DNA of 64,000 nt, taken from assembly GCA_965235115.1 (NCBI GenBank), contig OZ249436.1, positions 65,348,001-65,412,000 of the forward strand, given 5' to 3'. This document shows positions 28,244 to 64,000 of this stretch, piece after piece. A program made the position numbers and the translations under genes. The notes under the pieces were generated by a model. That model had not been told where the DNA came from, did not search any database, and was given only the letters and a program-made list of their open reading frames with translations. Each line of letters opens with the position of its first letter. The stretch's first letter is position 1. Source of the stretch: Laetmonice hystrix (Eukaryota).

Positions 28244-29747
28244 GTAAGGTGCACTCGCTTCTATTCCATCTGCCGCTAGCCTCTTTAGGTCAATGAACTA
28301 AAAAGAAGAAGAATATTTTTCAAGTGAAAATATCAGAGGCAGCATGAAGGGTGCTTTCATTACTTTAGTAGTGTAGCAAAGGGAAATTTGTTGGCATGTG
28401 TCCATTTCGAGTTCAGTTTAATTGTGAAACTCGTGTAATTCCTGGCTAAGATGAATAATTTCAACTGTGAAGAAGCTGATATTTTTGCATGTGGAAGTGT
28501 TACCTCCGTACGTTATTATAGACACCTCCATACGGTATTATATACCACGATTCTTGTATCAATTGGGGATTTTCTACATTTTTTGAAATGATACTAGTTT
28601 TAGTATAGATGATTGAATTGTTGTGACCTTATCTGGCGTTGACTGCAGTAGTCTGTGGCGCAGGTTGTTTGCACCGTCTCACTTAGACAAGTGACATGCT
28701 CGTCTCTCCCCGTCCATGGACTACATGCCAACATTCACTTCCATCGACCAACTTATACCGACAAGTATATTTGTAAATATATTTGTATATGAACATAGCT
28801 TTATATAGCTCTATATGGTTTGAGTGGCAGGAAGGGGTTCCCTGCTGCCGTTTGACGCTGGAGTTGTTTTGTATCACTGTGCTCACCCTCACTGCTGGAC
28901 CTGAGGTTAGATTATAATCATCGATGTCTTGTGGCTGACAACAGAAGTCGAGGTAAACTACCCCATCCCCCCTCCCCCGACAACCCCTCATTGTCCCTCC
29001 ACCCCACCCCACCGCCCTACCCCACCCCGACGTCCGCAAAGTCCCTCATTCAGATCAAGTTCTAGTGTTTTCTATAATCATACCACATTTTGATTCCATG
29101 CCAAAACTAAACATTTTTAACTTTATATAGAACCTTTACTGCCTATGTGTGGTATGATTACACATACACATAAAACCTATCCTTGGTGGGGTTTGACTAG
29201 GTCCCCCGCTACTATCACCATACCCCTCCCACTGTGCACCTCCTGACTATGGTTATTTTATACACGTGGGCATTGCTGCATTCATAACCAACGCTTCAAG
29301 CCAAACCTTGCACAAAGTATACAAGATAAAGAAATTAATACTAACTAAGCAAACATGATATTTAGGAGCTAAATCCAGTATCACTAGATGCAAACTTGCG
29401 AACCGTTTATCCATGGAACTATAATTCTGTGGTTTATCCATAGGTTTCAATTAACACAGGATTTTGAAGACCATGACAGGCAAATTTAAATGTGAATGTC
29501 ATCCAGTTATGATCTTCTGGCCACCTAAAAATAGTGATACATTATGCAGTCAATACAGATCCGACAGAATCTACATTTATGAATTGTATCAGGTATAAAG
29601 AATTTTGGGGACTTTAAGGTGTGCCTTAATCAGTGCCATATCTCCCCGTGCACCACTAACTGAAATACTGATACCATAACCCGTTTGACCATGCTAATTG
29701 ACCCATTGACTGGTTACTAATTTGATACTAATTGCGTTTTGTTGCAG

Positions 29748-32700
29748 ACGAGTGGCTAGAAGGCCTTGACCTTGCTGCAGAATCACCCATACTGAAATAC
29801 ATCCTGCACAATGACGCACACCTCCTACACAAATACACCCAGCACCCAAAACACAACTTTGTAGAGTACTACCAGAGTAGAGCTGACGGACAAAATCGCA
29901 CAGATACCAAAATATATATTGATTCCGAACCACAAAATATACCGAAAAGTACAGTGAATCATAAAGAAATCAGTATTAAACATACGGGAAACCCTCACAG
30001 TATTGACGTTACTACCCCAAGTTCATGCCTTGTATCTAATTCCGTTTCCTATCCGTCCATCCAACCATATAACCAAAGTGACTCGTTAAATCCCACTAAG
30101 TACCAACAGTCCAAAAGTATTACACCCCCGACCTGTCCGCCAGATCCACAAACTGCTGATTCTCCCCGTCCTACTAGGGTTACCACCTCCCACCAGGGGG
30201 CGACACCTACAAACCGTCCATGTGATCCCCTCTACATATCAGGGTGCCTTGACAATGACAGAGTTCTTCCAGGAAATCAGGATCCTCTTTACACTAGCGA
30301 GCTCAGTCCTCACACTACCAAATATCTAGATTCTTCTTTTGATTTGAAGGACATGGCAACCAGAAAAGAAAACTCCCAAAGGTTCTCCTTTACCCGGGCA
30401 CAACTGGCTGAAGAGTCAGAGTTCCTCTCCAACCCAGGACTGCAGGATCAGTACCTGGCAGGGAAAGGGAATCCATTTTATGGGGAGCCTTACCCAGAAA
30501 ACTATCGGTCTGCCCAGGGGGAACCTGATAGAAACAGTCACACAAGTGGTAGTTTTAGTGAGCCTCTAGAGATTGGCTCTGGCCCCGAGCCCACGCCTCC
30601 TGGGCCGTTTGCTGTGGTACAAAACAACCCAGTGTCAGAGGAATCAGATGGGATTCACAACGGCAACAACCGTACACAGAGGTGGGTGAATGAAGATTGG
30701 TTAGAACAAGCAGATCTTGGGTCAAGGGATGTTTTTACCTATGGACGGTACGAACATCCACAAACTAATATTGATAATAGAATCAACCGTTATGAAGTTA
30801 CAGCAGAAATTACAAACAGCGAGCCTCGGCCAGGGAAAAGGGGATTAGAACACGAACTGCGAAGACCTGAAGTCTTGGAGCTCTTCAAGAAATATTATCC
30901 TGAGGGTTCAAGTTTTGCTGATGATATCGTGTCTACTGCCTCATCAGAAAATTTTGCTGATGACGAAGATGAACAAAAGAAGAGAGAAGCATACCGCCAG
31001 AAGGTTGAGAGTCATTACCGTCGGCTCGTTGAGGAAGGAATCATGTCACCAGATACAGAGTATTTGAATCAATCCTGGTCAAGTCAGGACTTCCCTCCAA
31101 GGAGCAGCAATCCAGAAAGTCCAAGCTATCAAACTGGTATCACTGAGTCAGACTGGAAGGCAATAGACCATCACAGGAGTCTGTCCCAGGAGAAGTCAGA
31201 CAAGACTTCCAGTGAGCAGAGTTCACCAGGCAGCCTCCCAAGTGCTATGAAGAACTCAAACACACGGGAAGCAGAAGTGCCTGAAAAAAAGAAAAAGAAG
31301 GTCCGTGTTCGGCGTCATGATTCCCTTATCAAATATGACTCCGAGCCTGATTTGGTGGGAAAGAAACGGTCTGAGCTGAAGATGTCTATTTCTACTCCCG
31401 AGGAAGACCTTTTTGAAAACATTCCCCCGGACGGTAGCCCTGCTCATACAAATGCTGATTCCTTGTATCAGTCTGAAGTGGATTTCTACAAAACATCCGC
31501 CCAGTCGAAGTTGTCTTCCCGTCCACCTTCTTCTGGTCCACTGAGCCGTCCTCGTTCAACCCCCAACCTGGTCTCATCGCCCAAGAGGCAACGACCTTCA
31601 TCAGGCTCCCCAAGGAGTCAAGGATCAGAAGGTTCCAGTCCGTCGTGGAGGATGTCTCCTAGACATTCGCCTAAAACATCTCCCAAAGGTTCTCCAAAAA
31701 GACACCCATCAAGGCCCCTATCTGTCGATGATTTTTCTGTAAATTTTCGGCATAGGGAGCCCTCAGAGAGCAGCGATAGGTCCTCGAGGATTGACCCACA
31801 GACGTACCAGTCATATGCAGCTGGAATTCTTCACTCCTCAAGAAAGTCTGAACAGTTCCTGCGACTTCAAAAACACTATGCCACCCTCGAGCGAATAAGT
31901 GACATTGAAGATAGAACCCTGATGGATAATTTAGAAAGAGGTCTGAAGAAATTTAATAATGTCAGTATACAATCAAGGTCCAAGTCTGCAGGAAATGCAG
32001 ACTCTGATATTGACGATATTCTGTTATCAAAGTACAAACTGGACAACCTTGAAGAACTTTATGAACTTTATGCTGACCTCTATGAAGCACAGAGAAGAGA
32101 GGAATTCTTTTACGACAGTGGAAACCTAGAAGGAATGCAATGGAATCCTTGGCGTGATCCAGGCCTTAAAAAGAAGTATCTCTATCTTGAAGACTTGTAT
32201 GATATTTATGAGAAAGGTCACGCTTCAAAGAACACATTCGTTCGGAAACGGAGGCAGAAACCAGATGAGTTTCGCCGTGAACTCTCTTTTAAGAAACTAT
32301 GTGATAAATACCAATATCTGGATGAAGCTTCAAGGAAGCAGAGGATACTTGAAGAGTGGTGGAGTGGGAGGTCTCACTCGAGGCGAGGGTCGGATGCTTC
32401 ATCAATCATGTCAGGAGCCAGCTCCTCAGTGACCACAGGTTCTTACATTCAGATCATGGAGAATGCAGCCAAGAAGGCCAAAGAGCGACCCATGTACGGC
32501 TACAACATTCATGAAGAACCAAACAGGTATGAAATCCGCATTGAGAAGATCAGAAAGATGTCGAAATCATGCCCTGATATTTCAGGTGCCTCACTGCACA
32601 TCAGATCAGAATCACAGCCACAGCTTGGCAACAGACGAAGTGTCCGGGAACGTCTTCCTCCGCGTTCGTCATCTTATAAACAGTCAAGTTTTGGCTCAGA

Positions 32701-35700
32701 TCAACAGGTGGACGAAAGCAGATTTTACAGAGTCAAACCGTCGCCAAGGTCAAGTGGACTTCAGTCTCAGGCTTGTAAACTCCCGTCCGGGCGTAGTTCA
32801 GAGTCAGGCTATGACAGCATTGAGAGTCGTTCACCAAACAGTGCAGCATTAGTGAGAGCTGCCCACAACAATCCATTCAGCAAGGCAGTGTTAGAAAACA
32901 GTCAGGAAAGGGCTCACATTCAGGAGAATCCAGGTGACCGGAGTAGTTACACTCAAAGAATCCGTCCAGGCACTTCAAGGTCAGTGAGTATGCCCGAAGG
33001 TGAAAAAGCCATTCCAGGCCGTGGTGTGAACAGGAAACGGAGAGCAGATAATCGTTCGGACGATCCCAACCAAAGGCTTGAAGCGGTTCCTAAACAGAAC
33101 CTTCGACATCCTCAGCGACCCCCAATGCCAAAGAGAGATTACTTAGATTACCGTCCAATGAAACGTGACCCAAAAATATCACGGATTAGAGATGAGAATT
33201 TCCGCGAGAGGCAGCGGTGGAGGAGAGATTCCAAGCCAGTTCCTGGGGCAGTGGCTTCTGCTCTGTCCATGTTTGAACCAAGTGAAGAACCCCCGCCCAG
33301 CGCCTTCCATCCAGTGCAGCCACGCCCTAAAGATCCGCCTTCATATGACAGCCTCCGGCAGGTAAAGGCTAATGCTCGCCATCATGAACACCTTAGACTA
33401 GATCAAGCTTCAGGTGCTGGAATTTACGAACAGGGGCAGCGGCAAAAGAAAATGTCACCTCCAGCGTATAATCAAGTCTGTAACCAGAGAAGAACAACCG
33501 CTGACACTGGTGGTTCTTCTCACAGAACAGACCAAGCCAAGAGACCCGGTAACACTGAAGTGTTTAACAGCACCAAAACTCTGTTTGAAGCGCCTTTACA
33601 ACCTGTTGTGCCGAAGACAGCCTTACAAAGACGGTCACTGAACACAGCCCTTGGTCGGTATGAGGCCAGAATACGGAGTAAAAGCGGTGAAGAGCCTCCA
33701 AAACGACCACGGTCTGCATTACTGGAGCACAGTCCGGGAGATGAAATTGATAATTCAAGTTTGAGGCGCAAGGACCTCTCCAAGAGCACACCCTCCTTGA
33801 ATGAACATTATAAACCTAAGGTGGGGATCAATGATAGGTCTTACTCTCGGAGAAGAAATGAAACAGAAACGACTGATTCCGAGCATGAAGCCTTTGACCA
33901 GGAGACAGGTCAGCGTGACAGAAACCCTAGGAATGTTGGACCTTCAAATAATGGTCAAAGAATATACAAGCCTCAGCCAAGCAGGTATGGTGAAAGGCCG
34001 CACGTGGAAGCTGAAAGAAAAAGCTTGACCAGGCAGTCGTCTATTGACAGCCGATTCCAGCAGATTGAAAGATTCAATTCTAAGATGATGAATGACGATG
34101 ACAAGCCTGTCTGTGCTGATGATGAAGATGATGACCCTGTATATGCATCTGTGCTAACGAAGAAGCAGCGTGGCAGAGAGGGACCTCCCCCAGTGCCCCC
34201 ATACCACGGACACTACCATGATGGTCACAGTTCTGATGGTATTTCAAGTGAGATACCCAAAGGTGAAGGGGCAACAGGGGGTACCTGTGGGGATATAGCC
34301 CACCGAGCTGCCATGCCCCAAACTGGCCGTCAGTATTTGCCCCAAGGGGCTGAGGGAGGGGTTTGGGCAAGGGGCACCAGTGGACAGGCTGTTGGTAGCC
34401 ACCCCAGGGACTGGTCCGATGGCCATCTGTCCTCGACTGATGAGGACACTGGAGAAAGGAAGCATGGTTCTGACTACAGGATGTGTTATCAGAAGGAGCA
34501 GGAGTCGGCGCCAGCCCTGGCCAGGGTGACCCCCATCAGACCATTGAGCAGTGAGTCACACGGACCGAACCACTCTGACCCGGACCGAGACAGTCTCGGG
34601 TCAGATCGGTTCCCGGACGGTCGGCCCTTCCTGCTGGCGGGCCACAGGACAGACTCTACAGAACCAAAGAACATCTATCCAAACATAGCCAACTTCAGAA
34701 AAGAAATTGAGGCAGAGTATAGGAAAATGTATGAGATCACAAAACAGGCTGCTACCTATGGAGATGTCCAAGGTAAGCCCGGAGATAACAACACGAGGTC
34801 TTCTTCAAACTCCGCATTGCTTGCAGAGAATGATCTTTACAATCCGTACTATGGAGAGCTCGGAAAGTGGTCAGGTTTGAATGTGACTGAGGGTTTAGAT
34901 CTTCGCGATGGTATAGACAGGGGGCCTTTACAGAAGTGGGGACCAACAGATTTGTCACCGACAAGGTCAAGTAGTGTGATGACTGGAAGCAACGATACCT
35001 TGATCATTAAGGATAGTGAGGCTGACCTTTCACCCTCTGGTAGGGTTTATAGTTCGGTCAGGCATATGAAAACCCCCCAAGGCACGTCCCATTTGGAAAA
35101 GACGCAGTCTGAACCAAATCTTGCTAAAGACGTGGAAAATGCCAGTGGCCCTCGAGGGGCAAAATCAGAGGAAAACATACAGTTTTCAGAGGTTGAGGTT
35201 TCACGGAGTCCAAATTTTAGTCAGATCCGGGCAAAGTATGAATCAGGTTATGTGTCTGATAATCGTGAAGATAATAATTCACGAGAGGGGATGCCCCGGA
35301 CACTGTCGGGTGATCTTGATGAGATCAGAAGACAGTTTGATCGGGGAGGGTTGCACAGACCCAATAACTCCAGCCTTGGGGGGTTTAGGCCAAATAACCT
35401 CCAAGAACCAAAAGGTATGCAGCATAGCAGAGGGAAGAATAACCAGGAGGGCAACAAGGTGAAGAAATCGGCAATCCATCCGTGGAATATTGTCCGACCG
35501 CCATCTCCCCCAAGGTATGATGAGATACCCAGGGAGTTGCTCGCCCACATTGAGACCCTTGGGCAGGAGTGGGAACGTGACAAGTTCAGACGTAGCTTCC
35601 GAAGCCGTGGAAACACGCCGGAGAGTGAGACCTTCAAGGATGAGCTCAGTTTAGACCAGAACCACCCCGGTTACAGCAGAGAACCTGTAAGCAGTCCAAT

Positions 35701-36068
35701 GTCGAGTACGACTAGCTCCGACCATTACAGTGGGGGGTTTTTACGTGAGGTTCAGCCCCAGGTCGAGGCCCAACCCCAGCCCCGCCCCCCTCACCCTCCC
35801 CCATACGTCCCTCCCCCAGACATCAAACCCAGTCAGAGGAGGAACTACACACAATTCAACTACAGCACCGCATCAGTACCCCGACCTCACTCGGACTTCT
35901 ACGTCAAAACAAACGTCAGCTCACAATCTAGTACCGGTGATTGGCAGCAGGGGTCGCCTCTCTCTGCACAGCGCCCAAACGGTGCGACTGGCGCAGTTTT
36001 CCAGTCACACCCATCAGCCTTTACGCCAACTCGCCGAGATACAACCTTTGAGCACTATACAGACCCAG
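29748..36068 (+). CDS. SORBS: Giant SORBS/CAP exon (6321 nt, 2107 codons, phase 1-1), mostly low-complexity S/P/R/E-rich sequence
   Basis: ORF 29732-36088 (2118 aa) without a stop. Acceptor ttgcgtttttgttgcag in the phase required by exon 27044, and donor CAG|gttaca just before the ORF stop. Joins in frame to 37656. Confidence 0.88.
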
Positions 36069-36746
36069 GTTACAGTCTTTGCTACTAACTTTTTCAGCCA
36101 CCTCTCAATGTTGTTGGAATCCTGGTGTTGCGCACAGCATGTAGAATGGGGCCAGTTGGGACATTCCTGTAATAGTCGATCAGGGCGACTGTATGTTTCG
36201 TTGAGTTCTGGTGCACATGTTGCCAAGTGCTGACGCTGAGAATCCAGGCTAACGGAAGGAGACAGAAATTGATATCAAAAATATTTCGTCCTTGTCGAAA
36301 GTATTTCCGCGTAGGGATTTTGCACCCTGCATGGTTATTGGTGAAATATAAGAAATTGCAACTTATCATTGATTTGATCATTATCTGATCATTAAATGAA
36401 AAGAAAAAGATATTGTCACGGCGTAAGCCTGGAGAATCTCTCAGCAAGGCGTTCCTCGGTGTTCCCACTCGGGTTGCTGGTCTGTGTCTGTTTGGGGATC
36501 ACGTTTTGTGGACACTGGTACCGGGGCTTACAGTGGTGGTGTCGTCTGCTGCGCCTGTCGCTGGGTTGCCATGGGAACCATTACCTAGCGTTCCGTCACA
36601 CACGTGTTCCTCTAGCTCTTGTGTTGACCAGTTCCACGTTTTTTCCATTCCAGCTGGATTTTCAGCTCTTTATTCACTTCTGTATGGGGGTATGTTTTCG
36701 TACTTTTTACCTTGGTTCCTTTTTACCTTCCTCCTTAGCATTGCAG

Positions 36747-46482: not shown

Positions 46483-46682
46483 GTTTTGTGTGTGAAACAT
46501 GTTTATGGTGAACACATGGGGACGTCCTGCACTAGGATGACACGGCGGGCCAGTGATAAAACGTGATCCAAGATCGTCTTATCGTTTTGTGTGTGAAACA
46601 TGTTTATGGTGAACACATGGGGACGTCCTGCACTAGGATGACACGGCGGGCCGGTGATAAAACGTGATCCAAGATCGTCTTC
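46483..46682. repeat. Tandem duplication of ~101 bp (2 copies)
   Basis: GTTTTGTGTGTGAAACATGTTTATGGTGAACACATGGGGACG... at 46483 and 46584. Confidence 0.9.
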
Positions 46683-51100: not shown

Positions 51101-51389
51101 TCTAGAACTCCCCGTTGTTTTATTCGTTGATTCTGAGGCGCTCTACGACTTCTGTTCTTCCTGTACCCTTTGGAAAACAGCACCGGCTATTCAAAATATA
51201 GTTCTAATCGGTTGGAACGTTGGAGTACCTCTTTACTGGTGAAGTCGGACTAGGAGTTAGTTGGGAAAGGAGAAAGACAGATAGAGTCGGACTAAGTTCA
51301 GGTTGTAAAGGCTTTGCAGACGTACACCAGTGAGAGACTTGACACATTAGAGCGCGTCAAGTATAAACCGGGGAGTGTCGCTGAGGCTT

Positions 51390-52497
51390 GGAGGTGGAGT
51401 ATTGGCTGGCGGTAAGTGTGGCAGCGGTGGCCGTGATGTACTGATGGGCACTCAGGCAGCCGTGGTGTCGGCTAGGGGAGTGGTAGGGACACCATCTACA
51501 GTAACGAGCCTGGGTGTGTGTGTCTGTCTGGGTGGCGGTAAGTGTGGCAGTGGTAGCCGTGATGTACTGATGGGGACTCAGCCAGCCGTGGTGATGGGGA
51601 CTCAGCCAGCCGTGGTGTCGGCTAGGGGAGTGGTAGGGACACCATCTACAGTAACGAGCCTGGGTGTGTGTGTCTGTCTGTCTGGCGGTAACTGTGGCAG
51701 CGGTAGCCGTGATGTAGTGATGGGCACTCAGCCAGCCGTGGTGATGGGGAATCAGCCAGCCGTGGTGATGGGCACTCAGCCAGCCGTGGTGATGGGGACT
51801 CAGCCAGCCGTGGTGTCGGCTAGGGGAGTGGTAGGGACACCATCTACAGTAACGAGCCTGGGTGTGTGTGTCTGTCTGGGTGGCGGTAAGTGTGGCAGTG
51901 GTAGCCGTGATGTACTGATGGGGACTCAGCCAGCCGTGGTGATGGGGACTCAGCCAGCCGTGGTGTCGGCTAGGGGAGTGGTAGGGATACCATCTACAGG
52001 AAGGAGCCTGGGTGTGTGTGTCTGTCTGTCTGGCGGTAACTGTGGCAGCGGTAGCCGTGATGTAGTGATGGGCACTCAGCCAGCCGTGGTGATGGGGAAT
52101 CAGCCAGCCGTGGTGATGGGCACTCAGCCAGCCGTGGTGATGGGCACTCAGCCAGCCGTGGTGTCGGCTAGGGGAGTGGCAGTGATACCATCTACAGGAA
52201 GGAGCCTGGGTGTGTGTGTCTGTCTGTCTGGCAGTAAGTGTGGCAGTGGTAGCCGTGATGTACTGATGGGGACTCAGCCAGCCGTGGTGATGGGGACTCA
52301 GCCAGCCGTTGTGTCGGCTAGGGGAGTGGCAGTGATACCATCTACAGGAACGAGCCGGGCTGTGTGTGTGTCTGTCGTGGAGGTGGAGTATAACCGTGAT
52401 GTACTGATGGGGACTCAGCCAGCCGTGGTGATGGGGACTCAGCCAGCCGTGGGGTCGGCTAGGGGAGTGATACCATCTACAGGAAGGAGCCGGGCTA
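51390..52497. repeat. Nested higher-order minisatellite: 126-bp block plus variable 24-bp subunits (alternating 150/198-bp, 348-bp HOR)
   Basis: GCTAGGGG anchors spaced 150, 198, 150, 198, 150 bp; 24-bp subunit CAGCCAGCCGTGGTGATGGGGACT. Confidence 0.9.
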
Positions 52498-52686
52498 TGT
52501 ATTGTACCTACCCTAGCGGTACACGTACCAGACACGGTAAGGTGGGATCACGGCCAAACACGGCCCACTGACTGCCTGAATGTGATCCCGGGTTTACCGG
52601 GACAAGGTATGTGTTACCCTAGTGTTAACGTTATTAGCAGACACAGAAATCAGGACGTTGGCATTATTCCATGTCGACATGTTCAA

Positions 52687-52769: not shown

Positions 52770-54544
52770 ATCTGGCTGCCAGCCATATTTAGAATCTGTT
52801 CACGGCGGATACAGCGATAATTTATTCCATGCCTGTGTTGTCCATTCATCATGTTTACTGCTCACAGTCATTAACTACTGAAAAAAGAACAAAGCAGGCA
52901 GATTCTCTCCTTTGTTATCACGAGCGTCGATCCATTTGTCTTCATAACAAGCTGTGGATCCGACGCTGTTAGTCTCTCTCCCCCTGGTGGTGGGGAGGGC
53001 CAACAAGAGAGGCGGCAACCCAGCTCTCTCTCTGTCTCTCTCTATCTCCCTCTATATGTGTATCTGTATCCTTCTATTTCTCTGTCTTTAGTAGCCGGCC
53101 AAGAGATTCCGCCCTCCTTGAACATCTTATGCGAGAAAAACTTTGATCGGGAGGCGTACGTCTGGAGATACAGGAAGTCTGTCGCTGGAGCTTCCGCTAA
53201 TGGTGTGACCGTATCCGGTATATGTCTGCTCCCTGTTGTAATCATCCCCACCCATCCTCGCCTCCCCGTGACATGATGGGCATCACATCATTGGCATTAT
53301 TAAAAAACAGCGGAACTTGTGGGGTAACAAATTACCGAGTTCACAGCTATAACATCTGCTCCATCACGCCACCATCTGCTCCAGACCGTCACCATCTGCT
53401 CCCGGCCGGAGAACCTTTCCTGGTCGCGGTCCCAGGGCGTGATGGCAGAAACATGAGACCCACTAGCTTCGTCAGTAGAAACGTAGCTGGCCACAATCTG
53501 CTGTAAACATCTTGTTGACATTGCAGCATTACGCCATGAAAAACAGGACTGGAATTGTGGTGGATAGAAAGAATTAAATTTATACAAAGGATCCTGGAAG
53601 ATCATAAAGAAGTTGGAAGGATAATTTTCTTCATCTCTCTGTTATATTTAGCGTAGTGTACCTCCCCCCTCCCAGGTTGGTTATGAATTAACTTCTCTTG
53701 TTTCTGTCGTTCACATTTCGTCACCTACCGGCGTGACTACAGGAGTAGTTTATTGGTTGATAGGCGATGAGTGCCTGCCGAGTAGAAGACTGTACGGGAG
53801 GTAGAGTGGGTGGGGTTGGGGTAGGATGAAAACCCCCTCCCCAGGGTGGTAGCAACAGGCAGGGTATTGATCAGACGTCTACCAGACACCATTATCACCT
53901 GTGGTGATCTGTAATTGGATTCTGTCGGTCGCACATCGCCGGGTTCAGGAGGCCACAGCCGACCAGCCTCTTGTTGGCACCGACAAGTCGGAGTCCACGG
54001 AACAATGCCCTCCTCACAACTGGTTTCTCTCGATCTGATCGCTCGCAGATTGTAACGCCTAGAGGAGGCCATGCAGTGATATTTTCTCGGGCGGGGAGGA
54101 GGCGGAGGAAGGGGGGTGGGGCTGGGGGGTTGGTTTTGTTTCCTTCCGTTTGGTTCATTCCACCGAGATCTGTTGCCATTTATTGATCGCGTAGTGATTC
54201 AGGCCACCTGGATGTGGCTGATAAATGATGCACAGTGGCTCCCTCTGGTGGGCACAGCTCCAAGCGCCTCCTCCAAGCGGCACCGAGTATCGCCATGGTG
54301 ACGGACGGCCGGAGTGCGCGGGGGGGGGAGGCTGACCTTTCGTTTGGTTCCTCCCGGCCGCTGTGGGTTCCAGGCTCCGTCAGCACCCCACGGTGGCCAC
54401 CATACACTACCCCGGACCTTTACCACCCACTACCAGCAGGCTGGCACACTCCACCCCCGATAACCCTGATCACCGCCACCACCAGCCGGCCAACCATTGA
54501 TCTCACCGACCCGTCTTAAAGACAACCTCTCCTTGTGCTTGCAG

Positions 54545-54691
54545 ACCCCAGCAGAAGTCGCCCATCCCGCCGGCCGCCGACCGCTTCGAAGAGGTCGACT
54601 CCATGTCTCTGCAGCGCCCCAAAAAGAAAGTCGGATACCAGGTGAAGGGAAAGGCGCAGGCCTTGTATAACTTCGCCGCTCAGAACCCCAA
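54545..54691 (+). CDS. SORBS: SORBS/CAP exon (147 nt, phase 2-2): PQQKSPIPPAADRFEEVDSMSLQRPKKKVGYQVKGKAQALYNFAAQNP(K), start of SH3 #1
   Basis: Acceptor ccttgtgcttgcag, donor CAA|gtgagt. PxQKSPIP motif plus ALYNF (SH3 ALYDY-type motif). Confidence 0.93.
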
Positions 54692-55485
54692 GTGAGTAGT
54701 TCCTGTTTGAGTTTACAGTTCTATTGAAGCTAGGTCTTTGTTGTCGTGTCAATTCTAACCATTGATGGATGGTGTGCCAGTGGTCTATTCCTTCCGGCGG
54801 GCAGGATACAAAGTGAATGCTGTACGGGAACCACGTCCGGAGGGCCAACAGGACGGATAAATTAATTAATTATTTCTCATTAGTATCATGAAATCATGCG
54901 GTTCAAGACAGGAGAATCTTTATTTATTTTTCCACCATGTTTCCATGATCTTGTTTGCGCCGTTCCCACGTGGTTTTCTGTAGATTGAATGTTGAACCGT
55001 TGTTGTGTAGGGAGTGTTCCCAGTCAGAAAACTCGGCCCAGCTGGGCCGCGTGTTGGTTCGATTGATTCCCCTAGCTACTCATCAGTTTGATTATAGGAT
55101 GGTGCCTGACATGTCATGACCTGACAGGTTCCCTGTGCGGAATAATAAACACACAAGGCATGAGGCGGCCGCTGTTAACTGTGTGCGGGCGCTTTAAAAC
55201 ATCCAAAGTCGTTGTTCTATAGTGAATCCATGAACGTTTCTGGAAATAGGGAAAGAGTTTAAGTTAAAGAACAATAGGACTTTCAAGGCAGGGACCCACG
55301 CCATTTTTATTTAGAAGGGAGCCTTGTAAAAGTTGCTTTGGTGGTGCCCTGAGAAGAAAGGAAGAGTAAAGAGTACTTTAACTGAATGTTTTGCTGATAT
55401 GCGATCCTGAGCTTTGATAATGAGATGGTGGTCGGCGAGAACAAGGAGGGATTGAGGTCTCTTTAGTTAGTTGACATCCTCCTTT

Positions 55486-56878
55486 AACAGTTATTGCCAT
55501 GACACATGCGTTAACCGTGGCGCTCTCTGCCAACCCCACCTTGCTGTAGGGAGCTGTCGTTAACCGTTATTGTCATGACACATGCGTTAACCGTGGCGCT
55601 CTGTGCCAACCCCACCTTGCTGTAGGGAGCTGTCGTTAGCCGTTATTGTCATGACACATGCGTTAACCGTGGCGCTCTGTGCCAACCCCACCTTGCTGTA
55701 GGGAGCTGTCGTTAACCGTTATTGTCATGACACATGCGTTAACCGTGGCGCTCTCTGCCAACCCCACCTTGCTGTAGGGAGCTGTCGTTAACATGCGTTA
55801 ACCGTGGCGCTCTGTGCCAACCCCACCTTGCTGTAGGGAGCTGTCGTTAACCGTTATTGTCATGACACATGCGTTAACCGTGGCGCTCTGTGCCAACCCC
55901 ACCTTGCTGTAGGGAGCTGTCGTTAACCGTTATTGTCATGACACATGCGTTAACCGTGGCGCGCTGTGCCAACACCACCTTGCTGTAGGGAGCTGTCGTT
56001 AGCCGTTATTGTCATGACACATGCGTTAACCGTGGCGCTCTGTGCCAACCCCACCTTGCTGTAGGGAGCTGTCGTTAGCCGTTATTGTCATGACACATGC
56101 GTTAACCGTGGCGCTCTGTGCCAACCCCACCTTGCTGTAGGGAGCTGTCGTTAACCGTTATTGTCATGACACATGCGTTAACCGTGGCGCTCTCTGCCAA
56201 CCCCACCTTGCTGTAGGGAGCTGTCGTTAACATGCGTTAACCGTGGCGCTCTGTGCCAACCCCACCTTGCTGTAGGGAGCTGTCGTTAACCGTTATTGTC
56301 ATGACACATGCGTTAACCGTGGCGCTCTGTGCCAACCCCACCTTGCTGTAGGGAGCTGTCGTTAACCGTTATTGTCATGACACATGCGTTAACCGTGGCG
56401 CGCTGTGCCAACACCACCTTGCTGTAGGGAGCTGTCGTTAGCCGTTATTGTCATGACACATGCGTTAACCGTGGCGCTCTGTGCCAACCCCACCTTGCTG
56501 TAGGGAGCTGTCGTTAGCCGTTATTGTCATGACACATGCGTTAACCGTGGCGCTCTGTGCCAACCCCACCTTGCTGTAGGGAGCTGTCGTTAACCGTTAT
56601 TGTCATGACACATGCGTTAACCGTGGCGCTCTCTGCCAACCCCACCTTGCTGTAGGGAGCTGTCGTTAACATGCGTTAACCGTGGCGCTCTGTGCCAACC
56701 CCACCTTGCTGTAGGGAGCTGTCGTTAACCGTTATTGTCATGACACATGCGTTAACCGTGGCGCTCTGTGCCAACCCCACCTTGCTGTAGGGAGCTGTCG
56801 TTAACCGTTATTGTCATGACACATGCGTTAACCGTGGCGCTCTGTGCCAACCCCACCTTGCTGTAGGGAGCTGTCGTT
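55486..56878 (+). repeat. 76-bp (and 59-bp variant) tandem array, 19 units, spanning the 3' splice site of the SH3 #1 exon; 439-bp higher-order period
   Basis: Acceptor G positions 55549, 55625, 55701, 55777, 55836, 55912, 55988, 56064, 56140, 56216, 56275, 56351, 56427, 56503, 56579, 56655, 56714, 56790, 56866. The last is followed by the real exon. Confidence 0.97.
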
Positions 56879-56981
56879 CAAGAAGGGAGACACGCTATAC
56901 CTGCTGCGTAAGATCGATAACAACTGGTACGAGGGAGAACACCATGGCAGGGTGGGCATCTTCCCCGCTAACTACGTCAAG
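56867..56981 (+). CDS. SORBS: SORBS/CAP exon (115 nt, phase 2-0): [38 protein letters not shown], rest of SH3 #1
   Basis: Canonical SH3 motifs ([20 protein letters not shown]). Acceptor ccccaccttgctgtag, donor AAG|gtcagt. Confidence 0.96.
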
Positions 56982-57258
56982 GTCAGTACTAGACGCTCTT
57001 GTTTTTTTTTTTTTTTAAATGGGAACGATCCAGATTTAATATTTTGAAAGCAGTAGTTGTTTCCTATACATGTACTTGGAAGCTTCTGAATGTTTCCTGT
57101 GGCCAGAGGTTTCTATTGTCGACGTCTGTGAAGGCGGGGAAGGAGCTGTAATTTACTAAAATCCTTTCCACAGTCAGGTCATTGTCCACCGCGGTACATG
57201 TGATTGGTAGAAGTGATTGGTAGAAATGTTTTGTAGCCATATTTTCGTGTTGCTCCAG

Positions 57259-57369
57259 GTGTTGACGACCCTGGAGGAGGCCCATGCCGCGGCTTTCAGT
57301 CGGGAAGGGGCCGCCACGGCCAAGTACAACTTTACGGCCCAGACGTCTGTGGAACTACCCCTCCGAAAG
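57259..57369 (+). CDS. SORBS: SORBS/CAP exon (111 nt, phase 0-0): VLTTLEEAHAAAFSREGAATAKYNFTAQTSVELPLRK, start of SH3 #2
   Basis: Acceptor ttttcgtgttgctccag, donor AAG|gtaacg. AKYNF..QT.VEL motif of CAP SH3 #2. Confidence 0.95.
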
Positions 57370-57884
57370 GTAACGGAAACTTCCTCGAGCCGTACGGAGA
57401 GAAGTTTGAGATACCATCAGTCGGAGTACAATGTTAGGCACTCTGTCGGCTTTAAAACGATTCGTGTTATTCTGTTTGGATCTGGGTGGATTTGTATATT
57501 TATAACCCAGATTCTGCGAAATAAACTCTGGACAGGCCAAATTTTGCGTACCATTACATTTTGCGATTTGGGAAAGTTGACGATATCTAAAGACACGAAG
57601 CGGAATGGCCGAAATGATGGGGCTCTCCCCTGGAAGTCGCTAAACGTAAGCGGCCACACTCGACATCAGAAAGTGTATCAAAGTAAAAGGTTTTCACAAT
57701 TTCTGCGGGTTGTGTGAAGGAGTCAGCTGTTAACTGATGGTATTCAGGCCTTGACTGGTCCCTGATCAGTGTTACGGACGGATGCCCTCCGTCCCTCCCT
57801 CCCTCCGTCCGTGCCTCCCTCCGTCCGTCCCTCCAACCCTCCGACCTCTGCTGACTGACGTCTGGTGTTGTTTGTTACCACCAG

Positions 57885-58047
57885 GGGGAGCGGGTACAGT
57901 TGATCCGGCGGGTAGACGACAACTGGTACGAAGGTCGTGTCGGTAACCGACAAGGTATCTTCCCGGTGGCCTACGTGGACGCCATGCAGGAGCCGGAAAC
58001 ACCTTACGTCACCCCCGGGTCGTCAGCCGTACACACGCCGGTCACAG
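57885..58047 (+). CDS. SORBS: SORBS/CAP exon (163 nt, phase 0-1): GERVQLIRRVDDNWYEGRVGNRQGIFPVAYVDAMQEPETPYVTPGSSAVHTPVT, rest of SH3 #2
   Basis: SH3 motifs DDNWYEG and GIFPVAYV. Acceptor tttgttaccaccag, donor CAG|gtaaac. Confidence 0.95.
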
Positions 58048-59411
58048 GTAAACACCGCCACGCTCTAACTACTGCTTCTACTGATAACGGAGCCTGGCCA
58101 GGGGCAGGTAACCTCTAGGCTGGCACGTTTATGAGGGGAAACAGTTCTTTGACCAAAGTCGGTTTCCAAATTAATTAATAGATTAAGGCTGTGATTTGGA
58201 TAAAGATTTCCAACTTTTTAAATTGTGATTTTGTCCCCGTTGTTTGAAAGTGAAGCCAGTGAGGGAAACACTAAAGTAGGTGGGAGATCTAGAGGTTACT
58301 AGGCCCGTGCTAGGTTTGGACATAACCTCTCGGGATCACAAGATTTCAGCTCAAACACCAAAGTCAGGACAACAACTGACAGTTCCTGGGCGATGGGGGT
58401 TTTCTTGGCTCCATCTATTCTTTCATCTTTCCATGTTTTTCTCTCCATCCTCCATCTTTTTCTATCCTGGTTATGAAATGTAATTAAATTCAAACGTGAA
58501 GTTTTGTGTCTTGAGGTGATGAATATGTTCTGAGTAACAACTGACCAGTTTCTGTCTGAAAGAATATTTTTTGTTTCAGCTTTGTAGGCAGCTAACGGAT
58601 CTTACATAACCCGCGCTGATCATACTGACATCAGTTCAGATACCAACCGCAAGAACAAATGTATAGATATAAGTAGTTGTAGTATGTGTCGCTTTGTAGA
58701 GCAGTGCGCCTTGCTCGTGGCAGCTATAAATAATTATAACATTTTATTTTATAATGCTAATGTCTTTTTTTCAGTGTTTTAATAATATCTGTAATTACAA
58801 ACCCCAGCCACATTAAATATCCCAAGCCACTCACCAATTCGAAACAGTGTAAGAAAGACGGGTGTTCCTGTTTTATTTACGCGAAAAGCTCCGAAATATA
58901 AGGGATTTGCCTTGTTGAAACATTTCCCGCTAAAAACAAGCTTTTGCGCGTCCCAAGGACACGGACGCACACAAGAACATTATTACGCGACATTTAAATA
59001 ATGTCGTATTGGCTCTTGCTACTATTTAATAGAGCCCACATTTGTTTGTCTATGGCCAGCTGCTGACCCATTGCTTGTATTTAAGAGCAAAAGTAGCAGC
59101 CAGAATATGGGTGTAACCAGGTATGGTGAAGACCTCAGTTCTCGCTAAAAATGGTTTCACCTGCAGGTCATGTTCGTGCTGTGTCGGATTTAGCAGACGT
59201 TTAGAGAAAATACGCCAGACTGTATTTGTCGCTTCGAGAGCACAATATCGTTTTACAGACGAAATGGGAGAACGATTAACAGGTAAAACCGCCTGCTGAG
59301 TCAGCCAATTGCCATTTGATTTCTCTGGTCAATTTCCTGTGGAAACGACACCTGAGCATCTGGCTAGTTTTTCCCCGGATGCTTCGAAGTCGTGGCTGTG
59401 ACTACAGTTTG

Positions 59412-59930
59412 ATCTCAGGCCGTCACTGCAGACTGTGTCGCCCTATCTCAGGTCCTCACTGCAGACTGTGTCGCCCCATCTCAGGCCCTCACTGCAGACT
59501 GTGTCGCCCAATCTCAGGCCGTCACTGCAGACTGTGTCGCCCTATCTCAGGTCCTCACTGCAGACTGTGTCGCCCCATCTCAGGCCCTCACTGCAGACCG
59601 AGGCGCCCCATCTCAGGTCCTCACTGCAGACTGTGTCGTCCAATCTCAGGCCGTCACTGCAGACTGTGTCGCCCTATCTCAGGTCCTCACTGCAGACTGT
59701 GTCGCCCCATCTCAGGTCCTCACTGCAGACTGTGTCGTCCAATCTCAGGCCGTCACTGCAGACTGTGTCGTCCAATCTCAGGCCGTCACTGCAGACTGTG
59801 TTGCCCCATCTCAGGTCCTCACTTCAGACTGTGTCGCCCCATCTCAGGTCCTCACTGCAGACCGAGGCGCCTCATCTCAGGCCGTCACTGCAGACTGTGT
59901 CGCCCCATCTCAGGCCCTCACTGTGGACTT
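59412..59930. repeat. 33-bp minisatellite, ~15-16 copies
   Basis: Unit ATCTCAGGTCCTCACTGCAGACTGTGTCGCCCC; explains the 11-aa repeats in ORFs 59316-60002 and 59435-59932. Confidence 0.95.
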
Positions 59931-60102
59931 AGGCGCCCCTCATGCTATGGTCTGATGTGCCAGTCTAACATACGTAAAACTAACATGTATAACCCAACGT
60001 GACGTGTATTTGCCGTCTTCTGACGAGGCTGACCTGCATTCTAACCGTTTTGTGGCCTGTATGTGGAGTGACATGGACACGAAGGCCGTCACTGGTAGAA
60101 CA

Positions 60103-60260
60103 CAGACTTAGGGAAACTTCACAAGGATTCAACGATTGCAGATGATGGAGAAGGCAGACTTAGGACAACTTTACAAGGATTCAACGATTGCAGATGATGG
60201 AGAAGGCAGACTTAGGAAAACTTCACAACGATTCAATGATTGCAGATGATGGGGAAGGCA
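60103..60260. repeat. 52-bp tandem repeat, 3 copies
   Basis: CAGACTTAGG starts at 60103, 60155 and 60207. Confidence 0.9.
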
Positions 60261-60815
60261 ACCCGTACCGAATAACCCGCATTTAGAGAATCCGACCGTA
60301 CCACAACCTAACCCGCCTCTGGCTGATATCTGGCCATGTGGAAACGTCAAGACTTCAAAAATCATTCCAGGATATAAGTACTCAGACCACGCTGAGTCGA
60401 TGGAGGGTAAGGCGTGAGAGTTGATAGGGGGAGGTCGAGGGGGTGTTTCGGTCCGGGAGGGGGTATAGGGGCGACTGGTCGGTGACCTTTGGGAAGCCTA
60501 CCCACCCTCCACCCTCTTTGTCAGTCGTGCCAGTGTCGATCAGCTGGCCGATGGTGGCAGTCGGCGGGGATAGGGAGCGATGGGGGTGGGTGGTAGGAGT
60601 ACATGAGTACTGAACCTGGACAGGATCACCTGGCTGGCTTCAGAACCAATTCACATGTCAAACCGGGCGTCAGTTTCTGACATTGGGCAGAGGGCGGCCT
60701 CTGTCACTAACTGTGAGAAACTCCGAACAGAGATCGTTCTACAACTGGCTGGCTTTAAAATGGGAGGCGGTCTGCAGGGGTGATTATTTATATAGGAACC
60801 TTCCCGGGAATTGTC

Positions 60816-60947
60816 GCCACGGTGTGGAACCACCAACACCCAATGTTTGCCACGGTGTGGAACCACCAACACCCAATGTTTGCCACGGTGTGGAACCACC
60901 AACACCCAATGTTTGCCACGGTGTGGAACCACCAACACCCAATGTTT
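60816..60947. repeat. 33-bp tandem repeat, 4 copies (GCCACGGTGTGGAACCACCAACACCCAATGTTT)
   Basis: Direct reading. Confidence 0.93.
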
Positions 60948-61183
60948 TAGTGTGGTCTCTCATTGTGTGACTTTGTGTGCTGGTACCATGAGTGTAATAG
61001 TTTCATCAGGTTGGACCTGAGGGCGAGGGGTTCATGATCCCTAGGGTCTTGTGTGTGTGTGGAGTTGAGGAAACTGGTGACCCTGTAACCACCCACACTG
61101 CAACACCTGGTACTGTCCTTACGCTATCCTCAACTTAACTATCCTGGGCCCGGGGCTCGTGAGATTACTTGTCCTCACTACAG

Positions 61184-61261
61184 GGCCAGCCACACCCGTG
61201 TCGACTTCTTGGATCTCGCCTAGGCTATCCATGTTCCAGGGCCACCTCCAGGGTCGCGATG
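61184..61261 (+). CDS. Weak candidate next exon (78 nt, phase 1-1): GPATPVSTSWISPRLSMFQGHLQGRD
   Basis: Acceptor cttgtcctcactacag and donor ATG|gtagtt. The phase fits 58047 and the S/T/P content fits a linker, but there is no recognisable conserved motif. Confidence 0.2.
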
Positions 61262-61897
61262 GTAGTTAGGTAGAATACCACCTTCCACCCCTGTCCCACA
61301 GTGGGTGCGGTCCGACGACGGAGTTGTTGGGGAGGTGGGTAGTCTGTGCCGTGAGTGGGCCGACTAACCCGGCCGTGGGGCGGGGTGTGGGGGTGGGGGT
61401 AGATGGGTACAGGTAGGCGGTGAGTCGATGAGGTCCACCGCTCTGATCCACGAGAGGGGACGGTAGCTGCTGACACAGCAGGTGGGCATGCAGGTCACTG
61501 GGTGCTGACCTTGGAGTGGGTTATTATATGTCACCGCCAACTGGGACGGAGTCTTACTGGTCGTAGGGTCTGGGGAGTCGGACCCCCGCCCCCCTTTCAA
61601 AATACATATTAAAAGTAAATTTAATTTAAAAACAAAACAAAAATCAAAATCACTATAATGCATCTAAAAGACCGGGCAGAAAAGGTAATTTTTACTGTAG
61701 AAAGGGAAGTCCTGGAAAATACTCAGATAAAATCGCTGGAAATGTTTTCAATCAGAAATCTCGATGGAAGGAGGCCGACCGAGCACCCAGGCCGATGACA
61801 CTAACCTAAATCAGATGGCTCGTATTAATAGAGTGGTATAAAAACGTTTGGAGAACAGAACCGTTTCCTCCCAGGGTAAGGGGGCACATAGTTCTTT

Positions 61898-62250
61898 ATT
61901 TAAAAATTAAACGAATATATGAAGTTTAATTATAATCATACTAGTGCTACTTTAGGTCACGAAGTAGTGTGGCTTAAGGCTTGTGGCTTGAGCGTAGATT
62001 CCTCAGTTTTCAACAGCGCCGGAAGGTTAATCTTTCCATCCCAAAGGGGGGGAATAAATGTGGTCATTAGGCCTAATATTACAATCCATCGTCTTTATGT
62101 AGGCATATGACACATTGCAGTTGGTACGAGTGCCCCCATGGCTGCGTGCCCTGATGGCACCGAACCAAGGGTGGGCCACACTACTTCGTGACCTAAAGTA
62201 GCACTAGTATGATTATAATTAAACTTCATATATTCGTTTAATTTTTAAAT
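61898..62250. repeat. Perfect 76-bp inverted repeat (61898-61973 / 62175-62250) with a 201-bp spacer; probable MITE/foldback
   Basis: The right arm is the exact reverse complement of the left arm. Confidence 0.9.
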
Positions 62251-64000
62251 CATACCACGTGACTACTTGAAGTAGGTCACGAACGTGTGGCTTCTTCATT
62301 TCGTGCGAAAGATTAACTGACGCTGGCTTAATTCATGAATACGGATACATGCTCCCAAGAGACCTTCGAAAATAAGAGGGGGAGTCAATATTGATCCGTA
62401 ATAACTTAATATATTCTCCATCTAACACCTAACCTCATGCTGTGTTATAGATGTGAGGTTATTGTGCCCCCCCCCCCTTGTTGCCCCAAGTATGGCAGCA
62501 GGGTGGGATGGGGGGAATATTGTGCAAGATCAATGCTCCAATGGGAGGAGCCGACAACTATAGTGTGTCGAATCACAGTTTGATTGGTTTCTGGTGCGTG
62601 CCTATGAGAGCACAGCAGCAAGACTACAGAACTAAACGTAATCAGATATAGAGATGGTCCCTATTAACGTTTCCCACACTTCCGGTTGTAAGTTTGGGAT
62701 AAAGTTTGTGACAGTGGGGAAATGCAACGGTCGTTCATAAACCCGTGCGGGCGTGGAGGGCGCACTCCACCCCGCAGCATCCAAGATTAAGTGTACTGTC
62801 AGGACACATTATACGTCTTGCGTACCGCATTCGTGCATGTGTACGCTGAGTGCCCACACCCCTGCCCCGTGTTTGTTTAGGAACACCATGTCCACTGACG
62901 GCTGGGCGTGAGGCGGTGTGATGGTGCCTGTAATATACTGTCACGCAGCCTGCATGAGGTCAATGTCACAATGACACAGACAGTAAAGGCTGAGTTCGTC
63001 CACCTCGTATTTTACAAATGCAGGGATAAGGATTTTCTTAGGGGTTTATTTGTTTAATTTTTAATTTATTGTAATTTGGACGAATAAATTAACGATAGCG
63101 CAGAATCAGCGCCCAAGTAATTTCCCGAGCCTACCGTCGTCACACCGGGGAGGAGGCCTACGTATGCCTACGAAGACAGAGTCGCAGCCTAGACGGTAGA
63201 CCATGTATATATTATGTAAAGAGGTTTTTCCGTAGTGCCGTCGGGCAGGAAGGGGAGAAACAATTGGATAAATTGTCCCACATCGTCGGTTTCTCGATCC
63301 GTACGGTCAGCGCAATTTTGGGATTGTTCTGTATGTGTGATAGGAGCACAATAAACGTACTTGCCCAATGTTGGGCGCTATGTAGACTCCTGTCAACGTT
63401 AGGCAGTGCAAGCGATCACACTTCCAGATCTGAATCATCAAACGAGTGTCAAGTCAGGTCGGCTGAGCGAAGTCATGAAACTAGTGCACAGTCAGGTCGG
63501 CAAGGAAGAGGGGAATCCTGACTTTCTTGCGGAGGTTTGTTCGATGTCGGAGTCCACCGTCTGAGGTAAAGTTTGATTCGGAGGCTAATGTTCCAGTAGG
63601 TCGCCATAGTCTGCCGAGGTTGGTCAAAGTTATAGGCGTTGGTATTGTTTGTCCCTAAATGGCTGGGAGAGCGATTTAGTCAACCCACTGGTTAACTGTG
63701 AGGTCTTGTAGCATGTCATGGGATGCTCGGTTTCAAAGCCGATTAAAACGACCTGTCCCTGTTACAGTGCACAGTTTTCACTAAAGCTTGATTCATTTTG
63801 GAAGGGACCCCTACGGTATAGGTTATTACCGAAGGGCGAATTTCCAACTTCGCGTAACCCTTCAACAGGTGTTGCAGGAAGTAGGGCCTAGTCATGTATT
63901 CGTAGAAATCTCTCTACGAACCGTCCATCGACCCAATAATGACAGTGCATTGTGGGGAGCCATTGGCTAGCGGATATGTATACCGTCACGTGCTCCAAAG

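What the first reader, a model, noticed from the sequence alone, without database searches (positions are those of the whole stretch)
55486..56878. Satellite built from a real 3' splice site: 18 decoy acceptors, each leading to a premature stop, in front of the SH3 #1 exon
Seen: each unit contains a branch-point-like TTAAC, the pyrimidine tract CCCCACCTTGCTGTAG and the first 12 nt of the exon (GGAGCTGTCGTT). The 19th copy continues as CAAGAAGGGAGAC, the true ELSFKKGD exon. Because 76 = 1 + 75, splicing to a 76-bp unit reads ELSL(T/A)[11 protein letters not shown](L/R)(C/S)AN(P/T)TLL and stops at the TAG of the next acceptor. Splicing to a 59-bp unit stops at a TAA in the following unit. So every decoy truncates the protein inside SH3 #1 and removes all SH3 function. 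Spacings (76x3, 59, 76x5, 59, 76x5, 59, 76x2) and recurring variants give a 439-bp higher-order repeat, implying very recent amplification. Inference: the spliceosome must reject 18 locally near-identical acceptors and pick the most distal one, probably by exon definition from the 56981 donor. Otherwise copy number would act as a VNTR rheostat that diverts transcripts to NMD or to an SH3-less isoform.
Basis: partly seen in the sequence, partly recalled or inferred. Interest (0 to 1): 0.85.

Follow-up and report, generated by a model that had tools for sequence, protein, structure and literature searches.

The report
Minisatellite that copies a splice acceptor
A 1.4-kb tandem repeat in an intron of a CAP/sorbin-type adaptor gene has copied the intron's 3' splice site 18 extra times in front of the real exon; it is a clean new example of a known oddity ("mirage" minisatellites), and is more likely tolerated than functional.

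Summary
Window 55486-56878 holds 19 head-to-tail units (16 of 76 bp, 3 of 59 bp). Each unit carries the last 64 (or 47) nt of the intron plus the first 12 nt of the exon for the second half of SH3 domain 1. Only the 19th copy runs on into the exon (56867-56981). All 18 upstream acceptors would give a stop 76-79 nt after the junction. A 439-bp higher-order repeat is present, and its two full copies are identical.

The gene is a CAP/SORBS-type adaptor of a lophotrochozoan, probably an annelid. Six relatives have the same intron, in the same phase, with a single acceptor and no array, so the array is a young, lineage-specific copy of a real splice site.

The kind is already described. Amphioxus "mirage" minisatellites duplicate intron/exon boundaries, including 3' ones, without disturbing splicing. 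The human F7 intron-7 VNTR is the 5' mirror image.

The decoys lack the purine-rich run that follows the copied 12 nt, and they lie further from the donor. Any leakage would be an NMD substrate. The "rheostat" idea is untested, and no RNA data or close relative was reachable.

The parts
54545..54691 (+). Exon for the first half of SH3 domain 1 (ends ...ALYNFAAQNP + AA, phase 2); the donor GT is at 54692-54693
   Evidence: Sequence read; translation; tblastn to Lamellibrachia, Paralvinella, Elysia and Lineus orthologues
54692..56866 (+). Intron of 2175 nt; its last 1381 nt are the array. The orthologous intron is 115-1090 nt in six relatives
55486..56878 (+). Minisatellite of 19 units (16 x 76 bp, 3 x 59 bp). 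Each unit is the intron's last 64 (or 47) nt plus the first 12 nt of the exon
55486..55561 (+). First (edge) unit. It carries two private differences (columns 4 and 12) and joins unique intron sequence on its left. A TT is shared by the left and right break points
55778..56655 (+). Two complete 439-bp higher-order repeats (one 59-bp and five 76-bp units each), identical to each other
56803..56878 (+). Last unit: it holds the acceptor actually needed (AG at 56865-56866), TTAAC at about -36 and a C-rich polypyrimidine tract. It is identical to units 2, 6, 12 and 18
56867..56981 (+). True exon (115 nt) for the second half of SH3 domain 1 (ELSFKKGD...FPANYVK); the donor GT is at 56982-56983
56879..56896 (+). 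Purine-rich run (72% purine, encodes KKGD) that begins immediately after the repeated 12 nt and is absent from every decoy; a putative exonic enhancer (inferred)
   Evidence: the orthologues are also purine-rich here
57259..57369 (+). Exon for the first half of SH3 domain 2
57885..58047 (+). Exon for the second half of SH3 domain 2 and the linker
29732..36088 (+). Giant open exon (2118 codons) of the same CAP/SORBS-type gene, upstream of the SH3 exons

Best explanation
This is a "mirage"-type minisatellite.

Origin
- A 76-bp tandem duplication spanned the intron/exon boundary of the exon for the second half of SH3 domain 1, in a CAP/SORBS-type adaptor gene. Its break points share a TT.
- The duplicate was then amplified by slippage or unequal exchange.
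- One unit lost 17 bp, and a six-unit block of 439 bp was amplified again very recently.
- The genome is rich in minisatellites, so the array is most likely a by-product of that mutational habit and not a device.

How the gene still works (inferred, not shown)
- The commitment step at the branch point and polypyrimidine tract favours the last copy. Only that copy is directly followed by the exon's purine-rich run and lies within 115 nt of the downstream donor. The shared C-rich, U-poor tract is weak and so depends on such help.
- The units contain no usable donor, so a decoy would have to define an exon of 191-1432 nt.
- Whatever leaks to a decoy meets a stop 76-79 nt later, at least 112 nt before the next junction. 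That makes it a predicted substrate for nonsense-mediated decay and not a stable truncated protein.
For: Structure
- The gene is identified by its best annotated hits, named sorbin and SH3 domain-containing protein 1, cbl-associated protein or CAP, and by the full SH3_1 match of the spliced product.

Ancestral state
- The ancestral state is a single acceptor, with the same intron position and phase, in Lamellibrachia satsuma, Elysia marginata, Paralvinella palmiformis and three unannotated ENA assemblies. None has a tandem repeat in that intron.

Minisatellite-rich background
- Eleven arrays cover 6396 bp, or 10% of the window. One is 56 bp x 23.5 copies at 99% match.

What separates the true site from the decoys
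- Purine content at +13..+30 is 0.72 for the true exon and 0.44 for the decoys.
- The polypyrimidine tract has 20% T, against 45-50% T at the two SH3 domain 2 acceptors, read at or within one base of the junction.
- No GT inside a unit matches more than 5 of 9 donor consensus positions.

Precedent
- Amphioxus mirages include the 3' end of an intron plus the 5' part of the exon (globin BflGb6, 3 and 6 copies in two haplotypes). They are reported not to disturb splicing and to be unstable in length (PMC3087553; PMC3902484).
- The human F7 intron-7 VNTR has identical, functional but silent pseudo-sites (PMC1557585).
Against: - No transcript data for this species could be reached, so use of the 19th acceptor is inferred from the reading frame and from homology only.
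- Four decoys are identical to the true site from -64 to +12. The nearest would make ordinary-sized exons of 191 and 267 nt, so some use of them is quite possible.
- The enhancer role of the purine-rich run rests on general knowledge of GAR-type enhancers, not on a test.
- Copy number rests on one assembly. The amphioxus globin paper notes that one such array was mis-assembled in a draft genome.
Confidence: 0.7

Rival explanations
1. Copy-number rheostat. A substantial, copy-number-dependent fraction of transcripts splices to decoys and is destroyed by nonsense-mediated decay, or makes an SH3-less protein. The variable array would then tune the dosage of the adaptor.
For: - The decoys are identical or nearly identical to the true site, and four are identical from -64 to +12.
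- All decoys give early stops well upstream of the next junction.
- The higher-order structure implies ongoing unequal exchange and so probably length polymorphism.
- A length-variable repeat at a 3' splice site does grade splice-site choice in dog PMEL (merle; PMC7349775).
Against: - The array is absent from all six relatives examined, so it has no conserved role.
- The same kind of array in amphioxus Adh3, troponin C, globin and PGBD5 is reported not to yield aberrant mRNAs.
- The window carries ten other young minisatellites with no link to exons, which favours a mutational by-product.
Confidence: 0.15
2. Assembly artefact. The true locus has one or a few units, and the assembler inflated or mis-ordered a short repeat.
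For: - The higher-order copies are perfectly identical.
- A mirage array was reported as wrongly assembled in an amphioxus draft genome (PMC3087553).
Against: - The array has ordered internal variants (a 59-bp unit and four substitution types) in a regular six-unit pattern, with diverged edge units. This is what real tandem-repeat turnover gives.
- Other arrays in the window are equally clean.
- 1.4 kb is short compared with modern long reads (general knowledge; the sequencing method of this window is unknown to me).
Confidence: 0.07
3. Damaged allele. The expansion is a recent, mildly or strongly deleterious variant on the sequenced haplotype that cripples splicing of SH3 domain 1, balanced by a normal allele.
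For: - The array is very young.
- Junction duplications can abolish normal splicing, as in FGG (PMC9052919).
- SH3 domain 1 is strongly conserved, at 73-82% amino-acid identity in this exon across all six relatives, so its loss would matter.
Against: - The rest of the gene in the window is intact and open.
- The described mirages are compatible with normal mRNA.
- Nothing in the sequence removes the true acceptor.
Confidence: 0.06
4. RNA structure hides the decoys and exposes only the last acceptor.
For: The units contain short palindromes (GTTAAC, GTCATGAC) that could pair between units.
Against: - In partition-function folding of 55300-57150, with a 120- or 300-nt span limit, the polypyrimidine tract of the true site is not more open than those of the decoys. 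At span 120 it is 0.13, against about 0.6 for most decoys. At span 300 it is 0.50, against 0.26-0.62.
- The last two units plus the exon fold no better than shuffles, with a z-score of -0.57.
Confidence: 0.02

Closest known systems
"Mirage" minisatellites of amphioxus (Adh3, troponin C, globins BflGb6 and BflGb9, PGBD5)
   Same: - They are tandem, minisatellite-sized duplications that span an intron/exon boundary, so the splice signal and a piece of exon are repeated inside the intron.
- BflGb6 repeats the 3' end of an intron plus the 5' part of the exon, the same topology as here.
- They show length instability and concerted evolution, with edge units left out of homogenisation.
- Sources: PMC3087553, PMC3902484.
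   Different: - This one is in a lophotrochozoan, not a cephalochordate.
- It has more copies: 18 decoys against 3-6 in BflGb6.
- It has shorter units (76/59 bp against 150-160 bp in BflGb6; Adh3 units are 10-72 bp).
- It has a perfect higher-order repeat.
- Normal splicing has been shown for the amphioxus cases and not here.
Human F7 intron-7 37-bp VNTR with 5' pseudo-sites
   Same: - The minisatellite's terminal unit spans the exon/intron boundary, giving 5-9 splice sites of identical sequence.
- Only the copy next to the exon is used, although the others are functional when tested.
- It has served as a natural model of splice-site choice (PMC1557585).
   Different: - The F7 array duplicates the donor, downstream of the exon. 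The array here duplicates the acceptor with its branch-point and pyrimidine-tract region, upstream of the exon.
- The proposed F7 mechanism, 5'-to-3' scanning that picks the first site, would here favour a decoy. It cannot be carried over as it stands.
Canine merle allele (SINE poly(A) tract at the PMEL intron 10/exon 11 boundary)
   Same: A length-variable repeat sits at a 3' splice site, and its length decides between the normal and a cryptic acceptor. This is the known precedent for a rheostat (PMC7349775).
   Different: It is a mononucleotide tract in an inserted retroelement, not copies of the acceptor itself. Its graded effect has been shown, whereas here it is only conjectured.
[quoted passage not shown]
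   Same: It is a tandem duplication of a splice junction that leads to transcripts with premature stops (PMC9052919).
   Different: It is a single 403-bp duplication of a donor, with a proven loss of function. It is not a minisatellite.

Membership tests
Mirage minisatellite (tandem duplication of an intron/exon boundary) | Head-to-tail array of minisatellite-sized units | tested here: met
   There are 19 units of 76 or 59 bp, at 97-100% match.
Mirage minisatellite (tandem duplication of an intron/exon boundary) | Each unit contains the splice signal and part of the adjoining exon of a real, ancestral boundary | tested here: met
   Every unit contains the acceptor AG plus 12 exon nt. The boundary is conserved in position and phase in six relatives.
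Mirage minisatellite (tandem duplication of an intron/exon boundary) | Normal mRNA is still made; the duplicated sites are not used, or hardly used | not testable with these tools
   No transcript data were available. The species and its close relatives are absent from the protein collection, where the best identities are 56-70%.
Mirage minisatellite (tandem duplication of an intron/exon boundary) | Length instability or polymorphism between haplotypes | not testable with these tools
   Only one haplotype is in hand. The identical 439-bp higher-order copies and the diverged edge units fit recent unequal exchange.
F7-type VNTR pseudo-splice sites | The repeated site is the 5' splice site, downstream of the exon | tested here: not met
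   The site repeated here is the 3' splice site, upstream of the exon.
Recursive splice site / ratchet point | Acceptor AG immediately followed by a donor GT, so that a 5' splice site is regenerated | tested here: not met
   The junction reads TAG|GGAGCT. No GT in a unit matches more than 5 of 9 donor positions.
Conserved poison exon / regulated unproductive splicing | The stop-bearing alternative splice site is conserved among related species | tested here: not met
   The array is absent from all six relatives.
NAGNAG / tandem acceptors | Alternative AGs a few nucleotides apart that share one branch point and pyrimidine tract | tested here: not met
   The acceptors are 59 or 76 nt apart, each with its own TTAAC and tract.
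SH3 domain (Pfam PF00018) | The spliced product of 54691 joined to 56867 matches the full profile above the curated cut-off | tested here: met
   It scores 59.9 bits against a cut-off of 22.9, over profile positions 1-48 of 48. The decoy product scores 16.2 bits over positions 1-17.
CAP / SORBS (sorbin and SH3 domain-containing) adaptor family | Sorbin-homology region followed by three C-terminal SH3 domains | tested here: inconclusive
   - Two SH3 domains are present.
- Exons at about 16.45 and 26.9 kb align to the region upstream of the giant exon in the Lamellibrachia and Lineus orthologues. Taken singly, they do not reach Pfam Sorb.
- The third SH3 domain is not in the window.
- The named homologues are SORBS1 or cbl-associated protein.

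The most novel reading that the evidence does not exclude
The array is a polymorphic dosage dial. Each added unit diverts a further share of CAP/SORBS pre-mRNA to a decoy acceptor and on to nonsense-mediated decay. Copy number, which mutates quickly by unequal exchange, would then set the level of an adhesion and cytoskeleton adaptor and be visible to selection. It would also be the first mirage-type array described outside cephalochordates, and a ready-made 19-way competition assay for 3' splice-site choice.
Probability: 0.12. Interest if true: 0.65.

Novelty: new member of a known kind. Interest (0 to 1): 0.4.

Why it matters
- If the assembly is right, a conserved and presumably needed exon lies behind 18 acceptors, four of them identical to the real one for 76 nt. 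This gives a natural experiment on what, beyond the local signals, commits the spliceosome to a 3' splice site.
- It extends mirage minisatellites from amphioxus to a lophotrochozoan. That suggests they arise wherever genomes are rich in minisatellites.
- It is also a practical warning. Gene predictors and short-read aligners can place the junction on any of 19 equivalent sites.
- A regulatory role is possible but has no support yet.

Tried and rejected
- **Structure masking.** Local partition-function folding and a shuffle test gave no sign that the decoys are hidden or that the true site is exposed.
- **Recursive splicing, or decoys as short cassette exons.** There is no GT after the AG and no credible donor inside the units.
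- **A known RNA family.** There were no Rfam matches in 54000-58200 at E up to 1.
- **A dispersed repeat or transposon as the source of the unit.** Neither the acceptor half nor the intronic half occurs elsewhere in the window. The rest of the genome could not be searched.
- **Looking for the same species or a sister species.**
  - The three protein searches gave at best 56% identity (giant exon) and 66-70% (SH3 domain 2 exon).
  - The P0020-region search turned up Paralvinella, which is about 64% identical to the window's SH3 region.
  - The closest contig, carrying P0001, had no DNA available, and P0066 was not on record.
- **The representative search with the 38-residue exon.** It was swamped by multi-SH3 proteins, and I had to re-rank it locally.
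- **The original mirage paper.** PMC117041 is not held, so what I say about Adh3 comes from the two papers that cite it.
- I did not search with a spliced peptide that spans the exon junction to look for cDNA-derived fragments. Such a sequence has no reference form, and I did not want to type a long string into a database call.

Full report
**What is there**

Window 55486-56878 is a tandem array. A 32-nt motif made of the end of the polypyrimidine tract, the acceptor AG and 12 nt of exon occurs 19 times, all on the + strand. None was expected in shuffles, and there is no copy elsewhere in the 64 kb. The intronic half of the unit is likewise confined to the array.

The spacings are 76x3, 59, 76x5, 59, 76x5, 59, 76x2. 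Tandem Repeats Finder reports periods of 76, 59 and 439 bp; the 439-bp period has 3.2 copies at 99% match.

Cut in register, the array is 19 units, 16 of 76 bp and 3 of 59 bp. Each 76-bp unit is the last 64 nt of the intron plus the first 12 nt of the exon. The 59-bp units lack 17 nt. Only six columns vary, and units 2, 6, 12, 18 and 19 are identical. The two complete 439-bp blocks (55778-56216 and 56217-56655) differ at no position. The first unit has two private differences and abuts unique intron sequence. The left and right break points share a TT.

**The gene**

- The exon 54545-54691 ends ...ALYNFAAQNP plus AA. The exon 56867-56981 begins G GAG CTG TCG TTC and reads ELSFKKGD...FPANYVK.
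- Joined, the two exons match the whole Pfam SH3_1 profile, at 59.9 bits against a cut-off of 22.9.
- A second SH3 domain follows at 57259-57369 and 57885-58047.
- A 2118-codon open exon lies upstream at 29732-36088.
- The annotated homologues are called sorbin and SH3 domain-containing protein 1, cbl-associated protein or CAP.
- The nearest annotated relatives are the annelids Lamellibrachia satsuma and Paralvinella palmiformis, followed by molluscs, at about 62-64% identity over the two SH3 domains. The source is therefore a lophotrochozoan, probably an annelid. Neither it nor a close relative is in the collections I could search.

Spliced from 54691, each of the 18 upstream acceptors reads ELSL... 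and stops. The 76-bp units stop at the TAG of the next acceptor, because 76 = 1 + 75. The 59-bp units stop at a TAA. The stop falls 76-79 nt into an exon that would be 191 to 1432 nt long, at least 112 nt before the donor. The decoy product keeps only 17 of the 48 SH3 profile positions.

**Which came first**

The splice site is ancestral and the satellite is derived from it. In six other genomes the intron sits at the same codon position and phase, has one acceptor and carries no tandem repeat:

- Lamellibrachia, 409 nt, with the exon starting GGAGCTGTC as it does here.
- Elysia marginata, about 396 nt.
- Paralvinella, about 279 nt.
- Three unannotated ENA assemblies, about 115, 330 and 1090 nt.

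The array is thus lineage-specific. Given the identical higher-order copies, its last round of amplification is very recent.

**Context**

The window is full of young minisatellites. Eleven arrays cover 6396 bp, or 10% of the sequence, and one is 56 bp x 23.5 copies at 99% match. The Lamellibrachia orthologue also has several intronic arrays. In such a genome a seed duplication will now and then fall across an exon boundary.

**How the right site could be chosen (inference)**

The local signals cannot decide, since four decoys equal the true site from -64 to +12. Three things differ.

- The copied exon piece stops just before the run CAAGAAGGGAGAC. Positions +13 to +30 are 72% purine in the true exon and 44% in the decoys. 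Purine-rich GAR runs are classical exonic enhancers, and their effect falls with distance from the acceptor (general knowledge, not tested here).
- The shared pyrimidine tract is C-rich, with only 20% T against 45-50% at the two SH3 domain 2 acceptors read at or within one base of the junction. That is the kind of site that depends on enhancers.
- Only the last copy is 115 nt from the donor, and no unit offers a usable donor of its own. Exon definition alone, however, would still allow the nearest decoys, which give exons of 191 and 267 nt.

Predicted RNA structure does not help. The true tract is not more accessible than the decoy tracts, and the fold is no better than shuffles. Any leakage carries an early stop and should be removed by nonsense-mediated decay. 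That would make the array cheap to carry and hard to see in ordinary RNA data.

**What is known**

The kind has a name. [quoted passage not shown] They were then found in troponin C, in the globin genes and in PGBD5. BflGb6 repeats the 3' end of an intron with the 5' part of exon 2, with 6 and 3 copies in two haplotypes. The authors report regular splicing, length instability, and homogenisation that spares the edge units (PMC3087553; PMC3902484).

The human F7 gene has the mirror image at a donor, where 5-9 identical sites occur and only the one at the exon is used although the others are functional (PMC1557585).

Two cautions point the other way. A duplicated FGG junction is pathogenic (PMC9052919). 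A length-variable tract at the PMEL acceptor does grade splice-site choice in merle dogs (PMC7349775).

**Verdict**

The origin, the premature stops and the recency are right. The splice-choice puzzle is real but already known. The rheostat idea has no evidence.
- I file the array as a new member of a known kind: a mirage-type array, large and unusually clean, in a new phylum. Interest is moderate.
- Open points are the copy number in real DNA and the actual junction usage. Neither can be tested with the tools here.

Noticed in passing
window 29732-36088 (+): A single open reading frame of 2118 codons, rich in serine, proline and arginine, is apparently one giant exon of the same CAP/SORBS-type gene. 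It is 56% identical over its full length to an unannotated ORF in an ENA assembly, and partly conserved in Lamellibrachia and Lineus.
   Followed up: partly
window 2680-2890, 11374-12683, 14171-14661, 41663-42311, 44022-44301, 46483-46681, 51442-52500, 59412-59923, 60103-60260, 60816-60947: There are ten further minisatellite arrays. Together with the splice-site array they make up 10% of the window. Several are 99-100% homogeneous or have higher-order periods. None overlaps an exon that I could map.
   Followed up: partly
window 51357-52571 and 59316-60002: The long ORFs on both strands here (up to 398 codons) are by-products of tandem repeats, not genes.
   Followed up: no
L004 5687-5911, L005 5219-5443, L006 4927-5151: In three unannotated relatives the second half of SH3 domain 1 and the first half of SH3 domain 2 are contiguous. 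The intron that the window has at 56982-57258 (and Lamellibrachia at the same place) is absent there, which means intron loss or gain within the group.
   Followed up: no
L001 70513-70594: In Lamellibrachia a perfect 13-bp x 6.3 array starts about 27 nt downstream of the donor of the orthologous SH3 domain 1 exon. It is close to the boundary but does not span it.
   Followed up: no
window 55566-55575 (and each 76-bp unit) versus L001 about 70343-70352: A 10-nt string, TATTGTCATG, lies upstream of the acceptor both in the array units and in the single-copy Lamellibrachia intron. This may be chance or a small conserved intronic element.
   Followed up: no
window 55144-55149: An AATAAA hexamer sits in the unique part of the intron, about 340 nt upstream of the array. 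I did not look into whether it serves as an intronic polyadenylation signal.
   Followed up: no
window 58048-64000: The third SH3 domain expected in CAP/SORBS proteins was not found downstream, so the gene probably runs off the end of the window.
   Followed up: partly
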